The notes below the pieces were generated by a model, which ran no database searches, was not told where the DNA came from, and worked only from the letters and a program-made list of their open reading frames with translations. From IMG/VR virus record IMGVR_UViG_3300034073_003542, positions 124,001 through 188,000 of that record: 64,000 nt of DNA; one strand, written 5' to 3'. This document shows positions 4,164 to 51,855 of the stretch, in pieces; positions within the stretch are counted from its first letter, which is position 1, and the number at the start of each line of letters is the position of its first letter. Both the position numbers and the translations under genes were made by a program.

Positions 4164-4829
4164 TCACTCATTGTCAGGTATATATAAATAATGTTGTGGA
4201 TGACGTATATCATATTCGTCAAATACTTCGCCCACAAATCCTCTGTTTACCCTTTTTGTAGGAAATGGCTTTTTTTCAAAAAATGGATCATGAACTACTT
4301 TGTCGTTACCTATAATGGGATAAAGTACTTGCGAGAAAAAATCATAGTCTGTTCCATATTTATCTTGTTTATTAAAACCATTTAATAATTTCTTCATATC
4401 GTATAAGTAATTTTTACGATACCCCCACATTCCCCCAAGAATAGGGAATCCATGATAAGGATGATCACGCATAATATGAAAAGATTTATCGGTATTGAGC
4501 CATTCGTCAACAGCCGCCTTTTCTCTTAAAGATAAGCGACTATCGGTATCTCGAAATATAGAAATATCGATATTGGGGTAATATGATGTTTCAAATCTCC
4601 AAAACATTCCTCGCCAATCAGCAGGACCGCTCTTAATATAAAGATACGTATTTGGAAGAGAAGATAGGGTCTCTAATATATCGTCTGGAACATCTGACGC
4701 TACATGATAATGACACTCCCAATCTGGATAAAGATCAAGAGCTATTTCAGCGTTACGAATAGCCCCAACGGTATATTTTGGATTACTTCCCCATAAACTA
4801 AAACTAATTACTTTAAGTTGTTCTGGCAT
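4164..4829 (-). CDS. Conserved GT-A-like protein
   Basis: KVISFSLWG..PKYTVGAIRN, MFWRF, IFRDTDSRLS.REKAAVDEW, HIMRDHPYH..PILGGMWG, DYDFF; DxD-like motif. Confidence 0.55.
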   Translation of the reverse strand: MPEQLKVISFSLWGSNPKYTVGAIRNAEIALDLYPDWECHYHVASDVPDDILETLSSLPNTYLYIKSGPADWRGMFWRFETSYYPNIDISIFRDTDSRLSLREKAAVDEWLNTDKSFHIMRDHPYHGFPILGGMWGYRKNYLYDMKKLLNGFNKQDKYGTDYDFFSQVLYPIIGNDKVVHDPFFEKKPFPTKRVNRGFVGEVFDEYDIRHPQHYLYIPDNE

Positions 4830-5365
4830 TATACTCTTTGTGTTCTATTTTTAGCAGGAGAATAATTGTAGATGACTACTGGTATATTCTTCCAGATATC
4901 ATCAATAAGGTCAGAAATGAAGGCCCAGTCGCCGCCTGCGAGTTGACTACCGAATTTATTGCAGTGCAGTTCTACTTTATCAAATCCACTATTCTTGATA
5001 TAATTGCGAACATTAACCATACAATTGACTAATGCTTCGTAGTTTAGTGGGCGAGGATTGGTTTTTGGATTAATGATTCCATTTTGGGCGACCATATTCG
5101 CAAAAATTAAACGGTGGTTATGAAGGGGACTTTTAACTGTCTCTACATATTGTACATAACCTAGAGGTGGTTTTGTAAGCAAATCAAAGTTTGCTGCCAC
5201 TTCTGGAAATGCGTTACGAACAGCTAGAGCAAATCCACTACCAAATCCTCTAACGTTATTACAAACGTGTGGAATGATTACAGAACTACCCAAATTACCG
5301 CTTAAAACAAGCTTTTTTGCTGTGCTGAAAATTTCGCTATTAACAACACGTACATATGGATTCAT
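4829..5365 (-). CDS. Macro domain (ADP-ribose-binding/hydrolase) protein
   Basis: IIPHVCNNVRGFGSGFALAV, FANMVAQNG, LNYEAL, KFGSQLAGGDW..I. Confidence 0.85.
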   Translation of the reverse strand: MNPYVRVVNSEIFSTAKKLVLSGNLGSSVIIPHVCNNVRGFGSGFALAVRNAFPEVAANFDLLTKPPLGYVQYVETVKSPLHNHRLIFANMVAQNGIINPKTNPRPLNYEALVNCMVNVRNYIKNSGFDKVELHCNKFGSQLAGGDWAFISDLIDDIWKNIPVVIYNYSPAKNRTQRV

Positions 5366-5402
5366 GATATTTCTCCTTACTTAGAATGTCCTCACACCCT
5401 TC

Positions 5403-5431
5403 ATTATATCAGACGCAAGAGTACTTGTCAA
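5403..5431 (-). promoter_or_regulatory. sigma70-type promoter
   Basis: TTGACA-N17-TATAAT on the minus strand, upstream of the macro-domain gene. Confidence 0.85.
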
Positions 5432-5517
5432 GCACCAGACTACTGAGAGTCTAGTGTCTTACCCATATTTATATATAAGGTGAATGTATAATAGTGAATT
5501 ACTAAAATTATAAATAT

Positions 5518-5545
5518 TTGCGTTCCAAAATTTTGGGTGTATTAT
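5518..5545 (+). promoter_or_regulatory. Putative promoter of DUF1559 gene
   Basis: TTGCGT-N16-TATTAT, containing the GGTGTATT motif. Confidence 0.45.
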
Positions 5546-5579
5546 TAAGGTAGATTATAGCTAGTAATATATCCCACCT

Positions 5580-6776
5580 ATGGAGAAAAATATGAATATC
5601 AAAACTCGCCGCTCTGCATTTACCCTTGTCGAACTTCTAGTTGTAATTGCTATTATTGGTTTATTAGTAGCAATTTTACTCCCAGCCCTTTCTTCTGCTA
5701 GAAATTCTGCTCAGGCAGCAGCAAGCGGATCAAATTTAAGCACATTTGGTCGTGGTTTCATGATTTTCTCCACAGAAGATAAGCGATCACGCATGAGTAG
5801 CGGCGCTTTTGATCATTTAAGAGATGGAGATGTTAGAAAAGTTGGATGGGTTGCTGATATTATTAGGATTAAGGTGTCAAATCCAGGTAAGGCGCTTGAT
5901 CCAGCTAATACTTATCAGGTAAATGAAAAGGTTGCCGACTATATTGGAGCTACCAATACAACTAAAGCTAATCCTGTTCGCTGGAATAATAAAACAGCAG
6001 ATGTTCATTTTGGTGGAGCTAATGGCCCCACAGATTTTGCTGGATCACCAACACAAGCACAAAAGAATAAATTATGGGAAGACGGATATAACACAAACTA
6101 TGCAACAACATGGCAGTTTAGTCGTGGCGATGTTGTTCCTGGGTCTGACGGAAAGATTAATTCTAATGGAGCTATGAATCCTGTAACATCTGATCCTTCT
6201 AAATGTCCTCTAGATGGTGACGGCCCATTAACAGAAAAGAAATTAACTGGTGGAGGAGTAAGTCGTGATAGAGTTGCTGTAATGGGTGCGGCTCGTCCAG
6301 GCGACGGTTCTGATGCTCTTGTTACTGATGCAATGTTTACCACCTTTAATAATTTCTTTGGAACAGATCAAACAATGATTACAACTGGAGGTATTTTAGT
6401 TGAATCATTTACTGATGGAATGAATTGTCCTTTTACTGATGTTACTCTTGGTGGTGGCACAGATCAAAAAATTCATGAAATTAATGATATTTTCCCTATT
6501 CATGGTTCTCGTAAAACAACTGTTGGAGCAAATACTCTTCTTACAGGAGGATATGCCCAAGTTTTATTTGCGGACGGTCACGTTGCCAAAATTGAGGATG
6601 TGGGCGGTTATCAAGATAATCCTGACAGTTGGCTAGGCCCATATAAAACTGGTGGTGTTCCAACAGCCTCTTCGTTTGAAATTAATAAGAGTGGCTATGA
6701 TGAAGTTAGAGAACTGATCTGGCTCCATCAAATAGGTAACTCGTCAGGTGGTGTTGGCGGAGGTTCTGTAGAGTAA
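5580..6776 (+). CDS. DUF1559-type prepilin N-terminal cleavage/methylation domain protein with H-X-DG C-terminal motif
   Basis: RRSA|FTLVELLVVIAIIGLLVAILLPALSSAR...SNL; C-terminal H...GGYAQVLFADGHV. Likely start at ATG 5592 after GGAG. Confidence 0.9.
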   Translation: MEKNMNIKTRRSAFTLVELLVVIAIIGLLVAILLPALSSARNSAQAAASGSNLSTFGRGFMIFSTEDKRSRMSSGAFDHLRDGDVRKVGWVADIIRIKVSNPGKALDPANTYQVNEKVADYIGATNTTKANPVRWNNKTADVHFGGANGPTDFAGSPTQAQKNKLWEDGYNTNYATTWQFSRGDVVPGSDGKINSNGAMNPVTSDPSKCPLDGDGPLTEKKLTGGGVSRDRVAVMGAARPGDGSDALVTDAMFTTFNNFFGTDQTMITTGGILVESFTDGMNCPFTDVTLGGGTDQKIHEINDIFPIHGSRKTTVGANTLLTGGYAQVLFADGHVAKIEDVGGYQDNPDSWLGPYKTGGVPTASSFEINKSGYDEVRELIWLHQIGNSSGGVGGGSVE

Positions 6777-6811
6777 TTTTATAAGGGACTTACAAAAATC
6801 CTTGACTACTC

Positions 6812-7060
6812 TTATTTAACCTTTGTCCACTTGGGCGTGGGTAACGGACACTCCTGATCTCTCCACGCAAGTTTATTCATAAGAATTTCTTTGTCGTTAA
6901 TGTTACAGCCGCAATGGTCGCATCGCTCTAGTTGAGCATCATAATATTCGCAGCTTTTGCAAATAGCTAGACGTTGTAAGATTAATTCTTTGGAGCTTTT
7001 TGGTGAGCCATTTTTAATATGTGTCCAAAGAGCTTTTATAAATCTAAGTATTCTTTTCAT
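6812..7060 (-). CDS. Cys-rich small protein (DUF6171-like)
   Basis: RLAICKSC...CDHCGC...K..W..QECP..KW pattern. Confidence 0.55.
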   Translation of the reverse strand: MKRILRFIKALWTHIKNGSPKSSKELILQRLAICKSCEYYDAQLERCDHCGCNINDKEILMNKLAWRDQECPLPTPKWTKVK

Positions 7061-7520
7061 TTTCTTTCTTTCCTATTTTTTGAATTGTAGAATCAGCTCC
7101 AACTATCTCATACAGATCAACTTTATTGACTATCTCATTATCTTTAATCCAGCGTATTTCTCCGGTATTTAGACACACGCACATCCTTGTGCCACTTTTC
7201 TTAAAGTCTGTAGTTAATATATACCGTAAATGATTGGTTTTACAATCACACGAACATATAGAAACCTCAAAACTATCTCCTGGAGATAATTCTTCGAGAT
7301 AAAATTCACCTATGGCTTTATCGCTCATCTTCTTGCCATCTGCTAAAATACTCAGAATATTTTTCTTCTTCGTATTCTTGCTCTTTCTCCTTTTTATTTA
7401 GTTTATCAACTCGATGTTCTCTGTTGATATCTTTGATGAATTTTTTATCTTTGCGCTTTTTCCCATAATTATTCTTGCGGGAAAATGCTTTGCCTTCAAA
7501 CTCGTCGTTGTGTGACATAA

Positions 7521-8270
7521 TTAGTCTTTTACCTTATTCTCCTCTATCCACTTAATATACGAACTCACCCTGGTGTGACCAGACTCTTTATTATAGCGTC
7601 TACGTGTCTTTGTGTCAATCGTTTCCGATACAAAACTATTTACACCAGCTAATTTGCCGTCGATAAATAAACCGCCCCCACTATCACCGCTCTGTATAAA
7701 AAATCCAAGCTCTTTTTGTTGGCGTGTCCCAACAGGAAACGGACAAAAAATCATTTCTGGTTTTGATCTATAGATATAGTTTAATCCAGCCCTCTTATTT
7801 CCGTCATTATATAGTTTTTCGTCATGAAATCTCCCAGTAAATCCATAGCCAGCAACTTCCACCTTCTTACCTGTTTCGTTGCGATCAGTAAATAGTTCTG
7901 GATATTTATCTAATTCAAAGCTTTTCTGAGAATATCCTAGAGCTAAATCTACAGTCGCAAATGTTTTTGAGTTATAGTCTTTATGTATAAACACTTTTTC
8001 TAAAAGAAACTTTTTGGTCCCATGAACCACAACACAAATTTCTCTGTCATCAACAACATGAGCAGCCGATAAAACGTGGTGATCGTCAATCATTATACAA
8101 GAACCACAATAAACTCCACCCTTGTCATCAGAAGCAATCAATAAACACACAAAAGGAAACTCGTTACCTTTTTCTATGTATTTTTCGTCTTTAGTATTTG
8201 GGTCAGTAACGCCCCCATAAGATATGGCTGTTAGAAATATAGCTAACAATAGTTGTTTTAAATATGTCAT
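7521..8270 (-). CDS. Secreted trypsin-like (S1) serine protease
   Basis: Signal peptide; catalytic motifs VLSAAHV, DLAL, GDSGGGLF. Confidence 0.92.
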   Translation of the reverse strand: MTYLKQLLLAIFLTAISYGGVTDPNTKDEKYIEKGNEFPFVCLLIASDDKGGVYCGSCIMIDDHHVLSAAHVVDDREICVVVHGTKKFLLEKVFIHKDYNSKTFATVDLALGYSQKSFELDKYPELFTDRNETGKKVEVAGYGFTGRFHDEKLYNDGNKRAGLNYIYRSKPEMIFCPFPVGTRQQKELGFFIQSGDSGGGLFIDGKLAGVNSFVSETIDTKTRRRYNKESGHTRVSSYIKWIEENKVKD

Positions 8271-8333: not shown

Positions 8334-8711
8334 TTATTCTATAGATTTTAGCCATTCCCTATATCTTTTGGGCATATATCCTATTATTTTTCCTTTTTCT
8401 TTATCTTTATCAAATATCCTTGATTCTGGTATAGTCTTTATTCTATATTTCTTTTTAATCTCTTCGTCTTTTTCAATATCGATATAACACACGATATATT
8501 TATCTGATTCTGGAATACCGCCCAACAAAATGTCTCTTTTAAGTTTATGACAATAGGTACAGTATTCTGCCCCGAATATCACAAGGATCGGCCTGTTGGT
8601 TTTTTCGGCCAATTTTTGCGCTTCTGGTAACGACTCAATTATAAATCCTTCTGCTAAACTTGATGAACTAATGACTAGACCCAGAAATATCGCAATTAAT
8701 ATTTTTCGCAT
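8334..8711 (-). CDS. Exported thioredoxin-fold protein
   Basis: Signal peptide; FGAEYCTYCHKL (CxxC); cis-Pro loop TIP. Confidence 0.85.
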   Translation of the reverse strand: MRKILIAIFLGLVISSSSLAEGFIIESLPEAQKLAEKTNRPILVIFGAEYCTYCHKLKRDILLGGIPESDKYIVCYIDIEKDEEIKKKYRIKTIPESRIFDKDKEKGKIIGYMPKRYREWLKSIE

Positions 8712-51783: not shown

Positions 51784-51855
51784 AGACCGCAGTTGGAATC
51801 GAACCAACAAATGCTGTTTTGCAGACAGCCACCAACGCCAATTGATTTTGCGGCC
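51784..51855 (-). tRNA. tRNA-Cys(GCA)
   Basis: GGCCGCA/TGCGGTC acceptor stem, GCTGT-CTGCAAA-ACAGC anticodon arm, GTTGG-TTCGATT-CCAAC T-arm, U73 discriminator; no encoded CCA; promoter at 51882..51909. Confidence 0.92.

What the first reader, a model, noticed from the sequence alone, without database searches (positions are those of the whole stretch)
5580..6776. Phage-encoded DUF1559 prepilin-like protein, inverted relative to the genome flow
Seen: a type IV pilin-like N-terminus (RRSA|FTLVELLVVIAIIG) and a C-terminal H...LFADGHV motif in which H and DG are 23 residues apart instead of the usual 9; one of only three + strand genes. Established: DUF1559/H-X9-DG proteins are greatly expanded in Planctomycetota and related PVC bacteria. 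Inference: host assignment to PVC. The protein may be processed by the host prepilin peptidase and enter or poison a pilus/T2SS used as the phage receptor (superinfection exclusion), or remodel the host surface.
Basis: partly seen in the sequence, partly recalled or inferred. Interest (0 to 1): 0.7.

Follow-up and report, generated by a model that had tools for sequence, protein, structure and literature searches.

The report
Phage copy of planctomycete pilin-like gene
A 210-kb uncultured phage carries a well-preserved copy of one specific pilin-like envelope gene taken from planctomycete bacteria, which points to the phage's host and suggests that it remodels a pilus-like host surface structure during infection.

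Summary
Window 5580-6776 (+) is an intact ORF; the likely start is 5592, giving 394 aa. It has a prepilin N-terminus (RRSA|FTLVELLVVIAIIG) and a C-terminal H-X23-DG...V motif.

The protein does not hit PF07596 or TIGR04294 itself. It is nevertheless a full-length homolog of DUF1559 proteins (hhalign E 1.7e-56; best AFDB cluster is DUF1559, TM 0.62).

It is not an assembly chimera. Contigs from four runs and two other assemblies bridge both junctions, and the gene's GC3 (0.22) is typical of the phage.

The gene is a single-gene insertion, on the opposite strand, between two core genes that are adjacent in all 38 related phages examined.

It nests inside a clade of single-copy orthologs (74-83% identity) from small-genome, 63-70% GC Planctomycetota MAGs. 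Synonymous sites are fully turned over while 133 of 138 conserved positions are kept, so the acquisition is old and under purifying selection.

The phage has no pilus machinery; the candidate hosts do. It also carries a 92-aa truncated prepilin, and relatives carry canonical DUF1559 genes (at least 254 IMG/VR stretches).

Best reading: a host-processed functional mimic of an envelope or pseudopilus component, probably for receptor replacement and superinfection exclusion as with P-FimU. Keeping up a host function is the main rival. A "poison" role is unlikely.

The parts
5580..6776 (+). ORF of the prepilin-type, DUF1559-superfamily protein (398 aa from 5580; probably 394 aa from the ATG at 5592), stop codon included
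5582..5585 (+). GGAG Shine-Dalgarno, 6 nt before the ATG at 5592 (the likely true start)
   Evidence: read directly. The neighbouring minus-strand gene uses AGGAGA, also with a 6-nt spacer.
5592..5618 (+). short basic leader peptide MNIKTRRSA; predicted prepilin-peptidase cleavage after Ala (residue 13 of the 398-aa numbering)
   Evidence: Ala at -1 is common in planctomycete prepilins. Cleavage itself is inferred.
5619..5777 (+). mature N-terminus FTLVELLVVIAIIG... (Phe+1, Glu+5) and the long alpha-1 helix (residues 16-66 in the model)
5778..6500 (+). large insertion domain between alpha-1 and the C-terminal sheet. It has invariant Asp/Gly-rich motifs (GAFDHLRDGD, DGDGPL). The phage-private changes S112Y, +G155, H179Q and N240P lie here.
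6501..6584 (+). variant C-terminal motif H308-X23-D332-G333-H-V. The His aligns with the canonical His of H-X9-DG, and about 14 residues are inserted (predicted beta-hairpin 311-322).
6735..6773 (+). Gly-rich C-terminal tail GNSSGGVGGGSVE. The GGGxVE end is invariant in the ortholog family; model confidence is low here.
5366..5579 (.). 214-bp divergent intergenic region upstream of the gene. It contains a perfect sigma70-type consensus for the minus-strand neighbour (5431->5403) and an 8/9 inverted repeat (5433-5441 / 5448-5456). It has no similarity to host DNA.
4829..5365 (-). left flanking phage core gene (178 aa, no Pfam hit). In 38 of 38 related phage loci it lies directly next to the right flanking gene.
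6812..7060 (-). right flanking phage core gene (82 aa, Cys-rich, weak DUF6171 hit), convergent with the pilin-like gene (35 bp apart)

Best explanation
The gene is a functional phage copy of one particular single-copy envelope gene. The source is a narrow clade of small-genome Planctomycetota (Pirellulales-labelled MAGs). That gene encodes a divergent member of the DUF1559 / H-X9-DG prepilin-like superfamily.

Shown:
- It was captured from that clade, going by the tree.
- It was inserted as a stand-alone, opposite-strand moron between two adjacent phage core genes.
- It has stayed long enough for synonymous sites to reach phage composition, while the protein remained under strong purifying selection.
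- The phage has no prepilin peptidase or pilus/T2SS ATPase. The candidate hosts have both.

Inferred mechanism:
1. During infection the protein inserts into the host inner membrane through its class-III signal and alpha-1 helix.
2. The host A24 prepilin peptidase cuts it after Ala(-1).
3. It then takes the place of, or adds to, the host ortholog in a pilus- or pseudopilus-type envelope structure, as a functional mimic.
4. The most likely pay-off is receptor replacement or masking. A few phage-private changes at otherwise invariant positions (S112Y, +G155, H179Q, N240P) would alter what other phages, or the phage's own progeny, recognise while assembly is kept. This would work like the P-FimU and PilA-like proteins of Pseudomonas and Xylella phages.

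The 92-aa truncated prepilin elsewhere in the genome would act on the same machinery.
For: Family and fold:
- Prepilin motif above the cut-offs.
- Full-length profile homology to canonical DUF1559 (hhalign probability 100%, E 1.7e-56).
- 43 of 62 relatives hit PF07596.
- Confident model with a 51-residue alpha-1 helix plus a C-terminal sheet.
- Best AFDB cluster is DUF1559 (E 1e-18, TM 0.62/0.57).
- 21 of 25 weak PDB matches are type IV pilins or pseudopilins.

Host origin:
- The 74-83% identical homologs lie on cellular contigs near dnaN-gyrB, with conserved neighbours.
- There is one full-length copy per 3-4 Mb MAG.
- The phage sequence nests in the cellular clade (SH-aLRT 98), with a terminal branch of 0.17 against a median of 0.074.

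Age and selection:
- GC3 is 0.22 against 0.76-0.94 in hosts.
- 78-86% of four-fold sites differ between phage and host, against 39.5% between two hosts of equal protein identity.
- 133 of 138 conserved positions are kept.

Insertion: the flanking genes are adjacent in 38 of 38 related loci, and none of those has the gene.

Real join.

Dependence on the host: no PF01478 or PF00437 in the phage. A24 peptidase is present in 4 of 5 candidate hosts and T2SSE ATPases in 5 of 5.

Second prepilin in the phage.

Recurrence in the phage group.

Co-occurrence with the donor clade in the same samples.

Precedent for phage-encoded pilins acting as receptor replacements, including truncated and virulent-phage cases: PMC12952977.
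Against: - No expression data: no RNA run was listed.
- No evidence that DUF1559 proteins are assembled into fibres or serve as phage receptors. Their function is unknown (PMC10632474, PMC2754498, PMC12673574).
- P-FimU proteins are highly diverged from host FimU and carry extra loops. This copy is 83% identical to its host orthologs, and that pattern is the classical signature of an auxiliary gene that simply keeps a host function running.
- Four private replacements at conserved columns is high but not extreme (rank 9 of 119). Their position in 3D could not be mapped.
- The phage is 35% GC and the donor clade is 63-70% GC. No CRISPR-spacer, tRNA or proximity evidence ties the phage to that host.
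- No integrase was found, so any exclusion would have to act during lytic infection.
Confidence: 0.4

Rival explanations
1. Auxiliary 'host-function maintenance' gene. The phage copy does exactly what the host ortholog does, for example as part of a pseudopilus-dependent secretion or macromolecule-uptake apparatus. It is expressed to keep that function running after host transcription is shut down, as with cyanophage psbA. It has no role in receptor masking.
For: - High protein conservation with complete synonymous amelioration.
- Branch length within the cellular range.
- 96% of conserved positions kept, including Phe+1 and Glu+5.
- The host gene is single-copy and conserved in synteny, so it probably has a specific housekeeping role.
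- Two DUF1559 paralogs are essential in Planctopirus limnophila (PMC10632474).
Against: - The phage changes four residues and inserts one at positions invariant, or at least 97% conserved, in 118 cellular homologs. That is more than any of its 46 close-clade relatives.
- Related phages carry diverse, highly diverged DUF1559 paralogs (49% identity or less to named cellular proteins) at different genome positions. That looks more like a conflict interface than metabolic support.
- The same phage also has a truncated prepilin, which cannot carry a full function.
Confidence: 0.33
2. Dominant-negative 'poison' pilin. The protein enters the prepilin pathway but blocks the peptidase or the assembly platform. 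This shuts down the host pilus or T2SS, either for exclusion or to stop retraction or secretion.
For: - Opposite-strand moron with its own upstream region.
- Gly(-1) to Ala at the cleavage site, private within the ortholog family (116 of 118 have Gly).
- The companion 92-aa truncated prepilin could act this way. PMC12952977 raises this possibility for truncated PilA.
Against: - Ala at -1 is a common natural state in planctomycete prepilin-like proteins: 23 of 245 relatives, nearly all relatives of the 92-aa gene, and 29 of 80 viral DUF1559 genes.
- A poison needs only the N-terminal helix, yet the whole 380-residue globular part is under strong purifying selection.
Confidence: 0.12
3. Neutral or decaying passenger gene, an assembly chimera, or host DNA inside a mis-called provirus.
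For: Only one phage lineage in IMG/VR carries this ortholog. No transcription evidence exists.
Against: - Intact ORF with a Shine-Dalgarno sequence.
- GC3 is typical of the phage and unlike any host.
- Saturated synonymous change with 82% amino-acid identity rules out neutrality.
- Both junctions are bridged with zero differences and even depth in several runs and in independent assemblies from metagenomes 3300035670 and 3300036770.
- The flanks are phage core genes on both sides.
Confidence: 0.03

Closest known systems
P-FimU, with the P-PilA and truncated PilA proteins of Pseudomonas and Xylella phages (Sztanko et al., Cell Rep 2026, PMC12952977)
   Same: - A phage-encoded homolog of a host type IV pilin-class protein.
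- The phage carries no pilus machinery, so the protein must use the host's.
- The paper also describes PilA-like genes in virulent phages and N-terminal-only truncated pilins. These match this phage's no-integrase status and its 92-aa second prepilin.
   Different: - Here the protein is a 394-398-aa DUF1559-superfamily member with a roughly 240-residue insertion domain, not a small minor or major pilin.
- The host is Planctomycetota.
- The copy is 83% identical to its host orthologs, whereas the paper describes the P-FimU proteins as highly diverse with extra loops, and the Xylella P-PilA proteins are about 50% identical to host PilA.
- Incorporation into a fibre and any effect on adsorption are untested.
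DUF1559 / SBP_bac_10 (PF07596) with the H-X9-DG C-terminal domain (TIGR04294) of Planctomycetota and other PVC bacteria
   Same: - Prepilin N-terminus.
- Same overall predicted fold (AFDB DUF1559 cluster, TM 0.62).
- Full-length profile homology (E 1.7e-56).
- C-terminal ...LFADG(H/S)V strand.
   Different: - No direct PF07596 hit, and TIGR04294 is below its cut-off.
- The spacing is H-X23-DG, caused by an insertion of about 14 residues.
- It belongs to a single-copy, syntenic ortholog group rather than the usual large paralog swarm.
- It has an invariant GGGxVE C-terminal tail.
- It is encoded by a phage.
Type II secretion pseudopilins and type IV pilins (GspG/PulG/EpsG, PilA)
   Same: - Class-III signal peptide with Phe+1 and Glu+5.
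- Long alpha-1 helix followed by an antiparallel sheet.
- NCBIfam GspG, ComGC and PilA models match the N-terminal 40-60 residues.
- Weak structural matches are almost all pilins.
   Different: - Sequence matches are confined to the N-terminus and lie far below the equivalog cut-offs.
- Structural Z is at most 4.5.
- The protein is three times larger.
Classical phage auxiliary genes of host origin (e.g. cyanophage psbA)
   Same: Nested within host orthologs, compositionally ameliorated, and with a highly conserved protein sequence. This comparison rests on my own knowledge of those systems.
   Different: The product is an envelope or pilin-class protein of unknown biochemical function, not a metabolic enzyme.

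Membership tests
Prepilin-type (class III signal peptide) proteins: PF07963 / TIGR02532 | N-terminal cleavage/methylation motif scoring above the curated cut-offs | tested here: met
   PF07963 28.7 bits (cut-off 21.2) and TIGR02532 23.7 bits (cut-off 16.3). 33 bits in the genome scan.
Prepilin-type (class III signal peptide) proteins: PF07963 / TIGR02532 | Short basic leader, small residue at -1, Phe at +1, Glu at +5, about 20 hydrophobic residues | tested here: met
   The sequence reads MNIKTRRSA|FTLVELLVVIAIIGLLVAILLPA. Position -1 is Ala rather than Gly. Ala occurs in 23 of 245 relatives and in 29 of 80 viral DUF1559 genes.
Prepilin-type (class III signal peptide) proteins: PF07963 / TIGR02532 | Pilin fold: long alpha-1 helix packed on an antiparallel beta-sheet | tested here: inconclusive
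   The model has helix 16-66 and strands 311-339. 21 of 25 VIA-align hits are pilins or pseudopilins, but Z is at most 4.5. Foldseek finds nothing in the PDB.
Prepilin-type (class III signal peptide) proteins: PF07963 / TIGR02532 | Cleavage and N-methylation by an A24 prepilin peptidase, and assembly by a T4P/T2SS machine | not testable with these tools
   Only the prerequisites were checked. The phage has no A24 peptidase or T2SSE. The candidate hosts have them in 4 of 5 and 5 of 5 genomes.
DUF1559 (Pfam PF07596, SBP_bac_10) | Match to the PF07596 HMM at or above the gathering score | tested here: not met
   No PF07596 hit even at E<=1.
DUF1559 (Pfam PF07596, SBP_bac_10) | Homology to bona fide members over the whole domain (superfamily level) | tested here: met
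   - 43 of 62 phmmer relatives hit PF07596, best E 3e-20.
- hhalign of the ortholog family against an alignment seeded with two PF07596-positive proteins: probability 100%, E 1.7e-56, 357 columns.
- The top AFDB cluster is 'DUF1559 domain-containing protein', E 1e-18.
H-X9-DG C-terminal domain (TIGR04294) | Model score at or above 19 bits | tested here: not met
   12.6 bits, with only model positions 9-20 matched. 29 of 62 relatives do match.
H-X9-DG C-terminal domain (TIGR04294) | His exactly nine residues before Asp-Gly | tested here: not met
   The spacing is H308-X23-D332. The His aligns with the canonical His, with about 14 residues inserted. The His is Val in 6 of 17 family members.
Phage-encoded pilin mimics (P-FimU / P-PilA class, PMC12952977) | A phage gene homologous to a host pilin-class protein, in a phage lacking its own assembly machinery | tested here: met
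Phage-encoded pilin mimics (P-FimU / P-PilA class, PMC12952977) | The product is incorporated into the host pilus and blocks adsorption of phages that bind it | not testable with these tools
Phage-encoded pilin mimics (P-FimU / P-PilA class, PMC12952977) | Expressed from a prophage (for P-FimU proper) | tested here: not met
   No PF00589 integrase in a record rated 100% complete. The gene resembles the paper's virulent-phage PilA-like cases instead.
Host-derived auxiliary gene (moron) of a phage | Nested within cellular orthologs, absent at the same site in related phages, and with phage-like composition | tested here: met

The most novel reading that the evidence does not exclude
A large, uncultured and undescribed group of low-GC phages of about 150-220 kb infects Planctomycetota. 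These phages routinely carry DUF1559 / H-X9-DG prepilin-like genes because the enigmatic, massively expanded DUF1559 family builds the surface or periplasmic fibre that the phages use as a receptor or must control. IMG/VR holds 377 contigs with the group's RuvB-like gene and at least 254 DUF1559-like stretches. 64 of the 80 best stretches are flanked by homologs of this phage's genes.

The window's gene is a near-orthologous copy of a single-copy host gene. It would be the cleanest available handle for finding out what DUF1559 proteins do and for cultivating, or linking, the first phages of this phylum.
Probability: 0.3. Interest if true: 0.75.

Novelty: new variant of a known kind. Interest (0 to 1): 0.58.

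Why it matters
- **DUF1559 function.** DUF1559 proteins are the largest paralog family in Planctomycetota: 68 copies in Planctopirus limnophila, two of them essential, and 74 in Rhodopirellula baltica (PMC10632474, PMC2754498). Their function is still unknown. A phage that has kept one specific member under strong purifying selection, and a whole phage group that repeatedly carries members, says these proteins sit at the phage-host interface. That gives a concrete experiment.
- **Host link.** The gene provides a gene-level host link for a widespread uncultured group of large phages that has no deposited relative.
- **Wider scope for pilin replacement.** It extends the recently described idea of phages replacing a host pilus component (PMC12952977) beyond Proteobacteria, and beyond classical small pilins.

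Tried and rejected
1. **Gly(-1)->Ala as a sign of an uncleavable 'poison' prepilin.** Rejected, because Ala at -1 is common in planctomycete and viral DUF1559-type prepilins.
2. **Chimeric assembly or provirus with host DNA.** Rejected.
3. **Host's 67-aa upstream neighbour co-transferred.** Not found in the phage (tblastn best E 0.15). The upstream 214 bp has no similarity to host DNA.
4. **The 92-aa prepilin as a truncated remnant of a full-length DUF1559 at a syntenic site.** Only loose synteny with L201 (1.5 kb away), so this is inconclusive.
5. **A 41-44% paralog lying about 5 kb from a T2SSE ATPase in two host genomes, as functional context.** A TPR gene on the opposite strand and unannotated ORFs lie between them, so it is not a clear operon and I dropped it as evidence.
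6. **Solved-structure and viral-structure matches.** Foldseek finds nothing in the PDB or BFVD.
7. **Deposited phage genomes (INPHARED).** No match for this protein or for a canonical viral DUF1559. RuvB-like matches are 40.2% identity at best.
8. **PHROGs on nine structural-block ORFs.** Only a weak major-head-protein hit.
9. **Transcription evidence.** No RNA run was listed.
10. **Literature on phage DUF1559 or H-X9-DG.** None found in the searchable library.
11. **High-GC3 plus-strand ORFs at the right end of the genome as recent host genes.** No Pfam hits and possibly spurious frames; not pursued.
12. **Complex prediction.** Not run, because no defined binding partner could be named. A CRISPR-spacer search was also not attempted, because no tool takes unknown spacers.
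Full report
**1. The observation.**

The ORF listing finds a 398-aa ORF at 5580-6776 on the plus strand. Its N-terminus reads MEKNMNIKTRRSA|FTLVELLVVIAIIG, and its C-terminal region reads ...PIHGSRKTTVGANTLLTGGYAQVLFADGHV...

A GGAG lies at 5582-5585, 6 nt before the second ATG at 5592. No such site precedes 5580. The neighbouring minus-strand gene uses AGGAGA with the same spacing. The likely product is therefore 394 aa with a 9-residue basic leader, which is also the length of the database entry P0001.

PF07963 (28.7 bits, cut-off 21.2) and TIGR02532 (23.7 bits, cut-off 16.3) pass. PF07596 (DUF1559) gives no hit even at E<=1. TIGR04294 (H-X9-DG) reaches only 12.6 bits against a cut-off of 19. 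H308 and D332 are 23 residues apart.

**2. What the genome is.**

The window is bases 124001-188000 of a single 209,847-bp virus record. It is 35.4% GC, CheckV rates it 100% complete, and it is classed as linear.

A plus-strand block (1-42.6 kb) holds a weak major-head-protein match and a 5,102-aa ORF. Almost everything else is on the minus strand. No integrase was found.

The phage belongs to a large uncultured group. 377 IMG/VR stretches encode its RuvB-like protein, the best 80 of them at 63-73% identity, and many of these contigs are 150-224 kb at 25-38% GC. Deposited phage genomes hold no close relative.

**3. Is the join real?**

- *Run contigs.* Logan contigs of four runs were laid on 4600-7400. 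One 20,983-bp contig at 101.6x spans everything with no differences. In three other runs separate contigs bridge the left junction (5365/5580) and the right junction (6776/6812). There are no joints or loose ends, and depth is even.
- *Other assemblies.* Independent assemblies from metagenomes 3300035670 (160 kb) and 3300036770 (2.7 kb; the pilin gene plus four downstream phage genes) have the same arrangement.
- *Composition.* The gene's GC3 is 0.218, inside the phage's own range (median 0.25, 5-95% range 0.175-0.381). The cellular orthologs have GC3 of 0.76-0.94 in contigs of 63-70% GC.

It is not host DNA.

**4. What the protein is.**

- *Relatives.* An exhaustive phmmer search finds 58 clusters (at 50% identity) below E 1e-30 and 477 below 1e-10. 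Of 62 relatives, 43 hit PF07596 and 29 hit TIGR04294.
- *Profile homology.* I compared the ortholog family with an alignment headed by two bona fide PF07596/TIGR04294 proteins. The result was probability 100%, E 1.7e-56, 357 aligned columns. H308 falls on the canonical His, and about 14 residues are inserted before the LFADGHV strand.
- *Model.* The AlphaFold2 model is confident (pLDDT 88.9, pTM 0.87). It has a 51-residue alpha-1 helix, a large middle domain and a C-terminal four-stranded sheet.
- *Fold matches.* The best AFDB cluster is a DUF1559 protein (E 1e-18, TM 0.62/0.57). Foldseek finds nothing in the PDB or BFVD. A Foldseek-independent scan gives only weak matches (Z at most 4.5), but 21 of 25 are type IV pilins or pseudopilins.

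So the protein is a divergent branch of the DUF1559 superfamily built on a pilin scaffold. It fails direct membership of PF07596 and TIGR04294 but is homologous along its whole length.

One caveat on the motif: the His is replaced by Val in 6 of 17 family members, so it is not essential to this branch. The family also has invariant Asp/Gly-rich motifs (GAFDHLRDGD, DGDGPL) and an invariant GGGxVE C-terminal end.

**5. Where it came from.**

The 70-83% identical homologs all lie on cellular contigs. The conserved neighbourhood is dnaN-DciA-gyrB ... a 67-aa ORF, the pilin-like gene, a P-type ATPase, and three Band_7 genes. The named records are Planctomycetota MAGs (Pirellulales, Planctomycetaceae).

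Each 2.9-4.0 Mb MAG has one full-length ortholog, plus 15-40 paralogs that match only the N-terminus. In a sample of 151 genomes of that order, orthologs of at least 74% identity occur in five, all 3.4-4.0 Mb.

On a 129-sequence ML tree the phage protein nests inside this clade (SH-aLRT 98). Its terminal branch is 0.17 against a median of 0.074, with cellular branches reaching 0.43. The direction of transfer was therefore cell to phage.

**6. How long ago, and under what selection.**

At four-fold degenerate sites with the same amino acid, 78-86% of third bases differ between the phage and host genes. Two host orthologs of equal protein identity (83%) differ at 39.5% of such sites. Synonymous sites have been completely re-equilibrated to phage composition. 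Meanwhile the protein diverged no more than host orthologs diverge from each other, which means strong purifying selection over a long residence.

Of 138 columns that are at least 95% conserved in 118 cellular homologs, the phage keeps 133. Its private changes are G13A, S112Y, an inserted G155, H179Q and N240P. Counting replacements only, it ranks 9th of 119 and first among its 46 close-clade relatives.

**7. How it sits in the phage.**

In all 38 related phage loci that carry both flanking genes (the 178-aa and 82-aa ORFs), those genes are adjacent, with gaps of about 20-100 bp. None has a prepilin motif nearby.

Here 1.45 kb is inserted between them, on the opposite strand, with its own 214-bp upstream region that has no host similarity. 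This is a moron-type insertion private to this lineage.

The surrounding conserved genes include a trypsin-like protease and a thioredoxin-like protein, both with signal-peptide-like N-termini.

**8. Dependence on the host, and companions.**

The phage has no A24 prepilin peptidase and no T2SSE ATPase. Four of five candidate host genomes have the peptidase, and all five have 5-7 T2SSE ATPases.

The phage has a second prepilin gene at genome 189986-190264 (-), 92 aa, MRKA|FTLVELLVVIAIIG... It is an orphan beyond the helix.

One of nine complete relatives (G160) carries two canonical DUF1559/H-X9-DG genes (PF07596 at 130 and 160 bits). An IMG/VR scan with a canonical alignment found 254 stretches. 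Of the best 80:
- 70 have low-GC flanks;
- 76 are full-length;
- 71 keep H-X9-DG;
- gene GC3 is 0.13-0.41 in the low-GC contigs (0.13-0.35 in all but one);
- 64 are flanked by homologs of this phage's ORFs.

G160's copy is at most 49% identical to named cellular proteins, which are Adhaeretor and Posidoniimonas, both Pirellulales. Carriage of DUF1559 genes is thus a trait of the phage group. The window's gene stands out as a near-orthologous copy of a single-copy host gene.

**9. Host.**

- *For Planctomycetota.* The evidence is the nested phylogeny, the second PVC-type prepilin and the group-wide DUF1559 genes. There is also co-occurrence. In the runs that hold the phage, over 100 high-GC contigs per run (15 in the small X4) match the prepilin N-terminus. 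In X1 and X3, contigs at 2-7x match the body of the cellular ortholog at about 87-93% DNA identity.
- *Against, or open.* There is a 30-point GC gap. A similar gap is known for phiKZ and Pseudomonas aeruginosa (my own knowledge). There is no spacer or proximity evidence.

**10. Mechanism.**

Shown: origin, insertion, age, selection, and dependence on host machinery.

Inferred: membrane insertion, cleavage after Ala13 by the host peptidase, and entry into the place of the host ortholog.

The closest experimentally characterised system is P-FimU (PMC12952977). There, a prophage-encoded minor pilin is incorporated into the pilus, keeps it functional and blocks tip-binding phages. That paper also reports PilA-like and N-terminal-only pilins in virulent phages.

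I favour this receptor-replacement reading (0.40), for three reasons:
- the phage-private changes at invariant positions;
- the diversity and recurrence of DUF1559 genes in the group;
- the truncated companion gene.

The main rival (0.33) is plain maintenance of the host function. It fits the very high conservation. A dominant-negative poison (0.12) is disfavoured, because the whole globular part is conserved and Ala(-1) is a normal variant. Passenger or artefact readings are essentially excluded.

**11. Novelty.**

Phage-encoded pilins are a known kind. A phage-encoded DUF1559-superfamily protein is not described in the literature I could search. The function of DUF1559 is itself unknown. I rate this a new variant of a known kind, with moderate-to-good interest. 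The group-wide pattern noticed in passing is arguably the more important lead.

Noticed in passing
outside the window: genome 189986-190264 (-), = L023:1303-1581 (-): A second prepilin-type gene in the same phage, 92 aa (89 aa from the ATG): MRKA|FTLVELLVVIAIIG... N_methyl scores 31-33 bits. It has no homolog beyond the N-terminal helix. It resembles the truncated N-terminal PilA proteins of virulent Pseudomonas phages (PMC12952977).
   Followed up: partly
L134:595-1581 (-) and L135:505-1578 (-) (IMGVR_UViG_3300024324_000009); L138-L217: A related 171-kb phage carries two canonical DUF1559 / H-X9-DG genes. IMG/VR holds at least 254 DUF1559-like stretches. Most are full-length, ameliorated and in low-GC contigs. 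64 of the best 80 are flanked by homologs of this phage's genes. This looks like an undescribed group-wide trait.
   Followed up: partly
window 7521-8270 (-) and 8334-8711 (-): A trypsin-family protease and a thioredoxin-like protein, both with signal-peptide-like N-termini. They are conserved next to the insertion site across the phage group, so the pilin-like gene sits in a block of exported proteins.
   Followed up: partly
window 5403-5456: A perfect sigma70-type consensus (TTGACA-17-TATAAT with TG) on the minus strand at 5431->5403, serving the 178-aa gene. It adjoins an 8/9 inverted repeat (5433-5441 / 5448-5456) in the divergent intergenic region, which could be an operator.
   Followed up: no
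L002 (genome 19652-34960, +): A single 5,102-aa ORF inside the plus-strand (structural) block of the phage.
   Followed up: no
L009:500-7000 (genome about 200.5-207 kb): A region of raised GC (40-52% against 35% for the genome). Its plus-strand ORFs have GC3 of 0.5-0.62 and no Pfam hits. It could be a recent acquisition, or the ORFs could be spurious frames.
   Followed up: partly
window 51784-51855 (-): tRNA-Cys (GCA), the only tRNA in the window.
   Followed up: no
L010, L011, L013, L014, L016 (cellular loci): In the donor clade the ortholog always follows a 67-aa ORF and usually precedes a 675-681-aa P-type ATPase, not far from dnaN-gyrB. The 67-aa ORF is not in the phage.
   Followed up: partly
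L136:6019-7113 (-) and L137: In two host genomes a 41-44% paralog of the family lies about 5 kb from a T2SSE ATPase gene. The arrangement is conserved, but it is not a clear operon.
   Followed up: partly
L020 (CAZCHF010000010.1) and P0403: The taxonomic labels of some MAG records carrying family members look doubtful. One is labelled 'Candidatus Kuenenia sp.' at 65% GC with the Pirellulales-type ortholog. Another is a 'Patescibacteria group' MAG with a DUF1559 protein.
   Followed up: no
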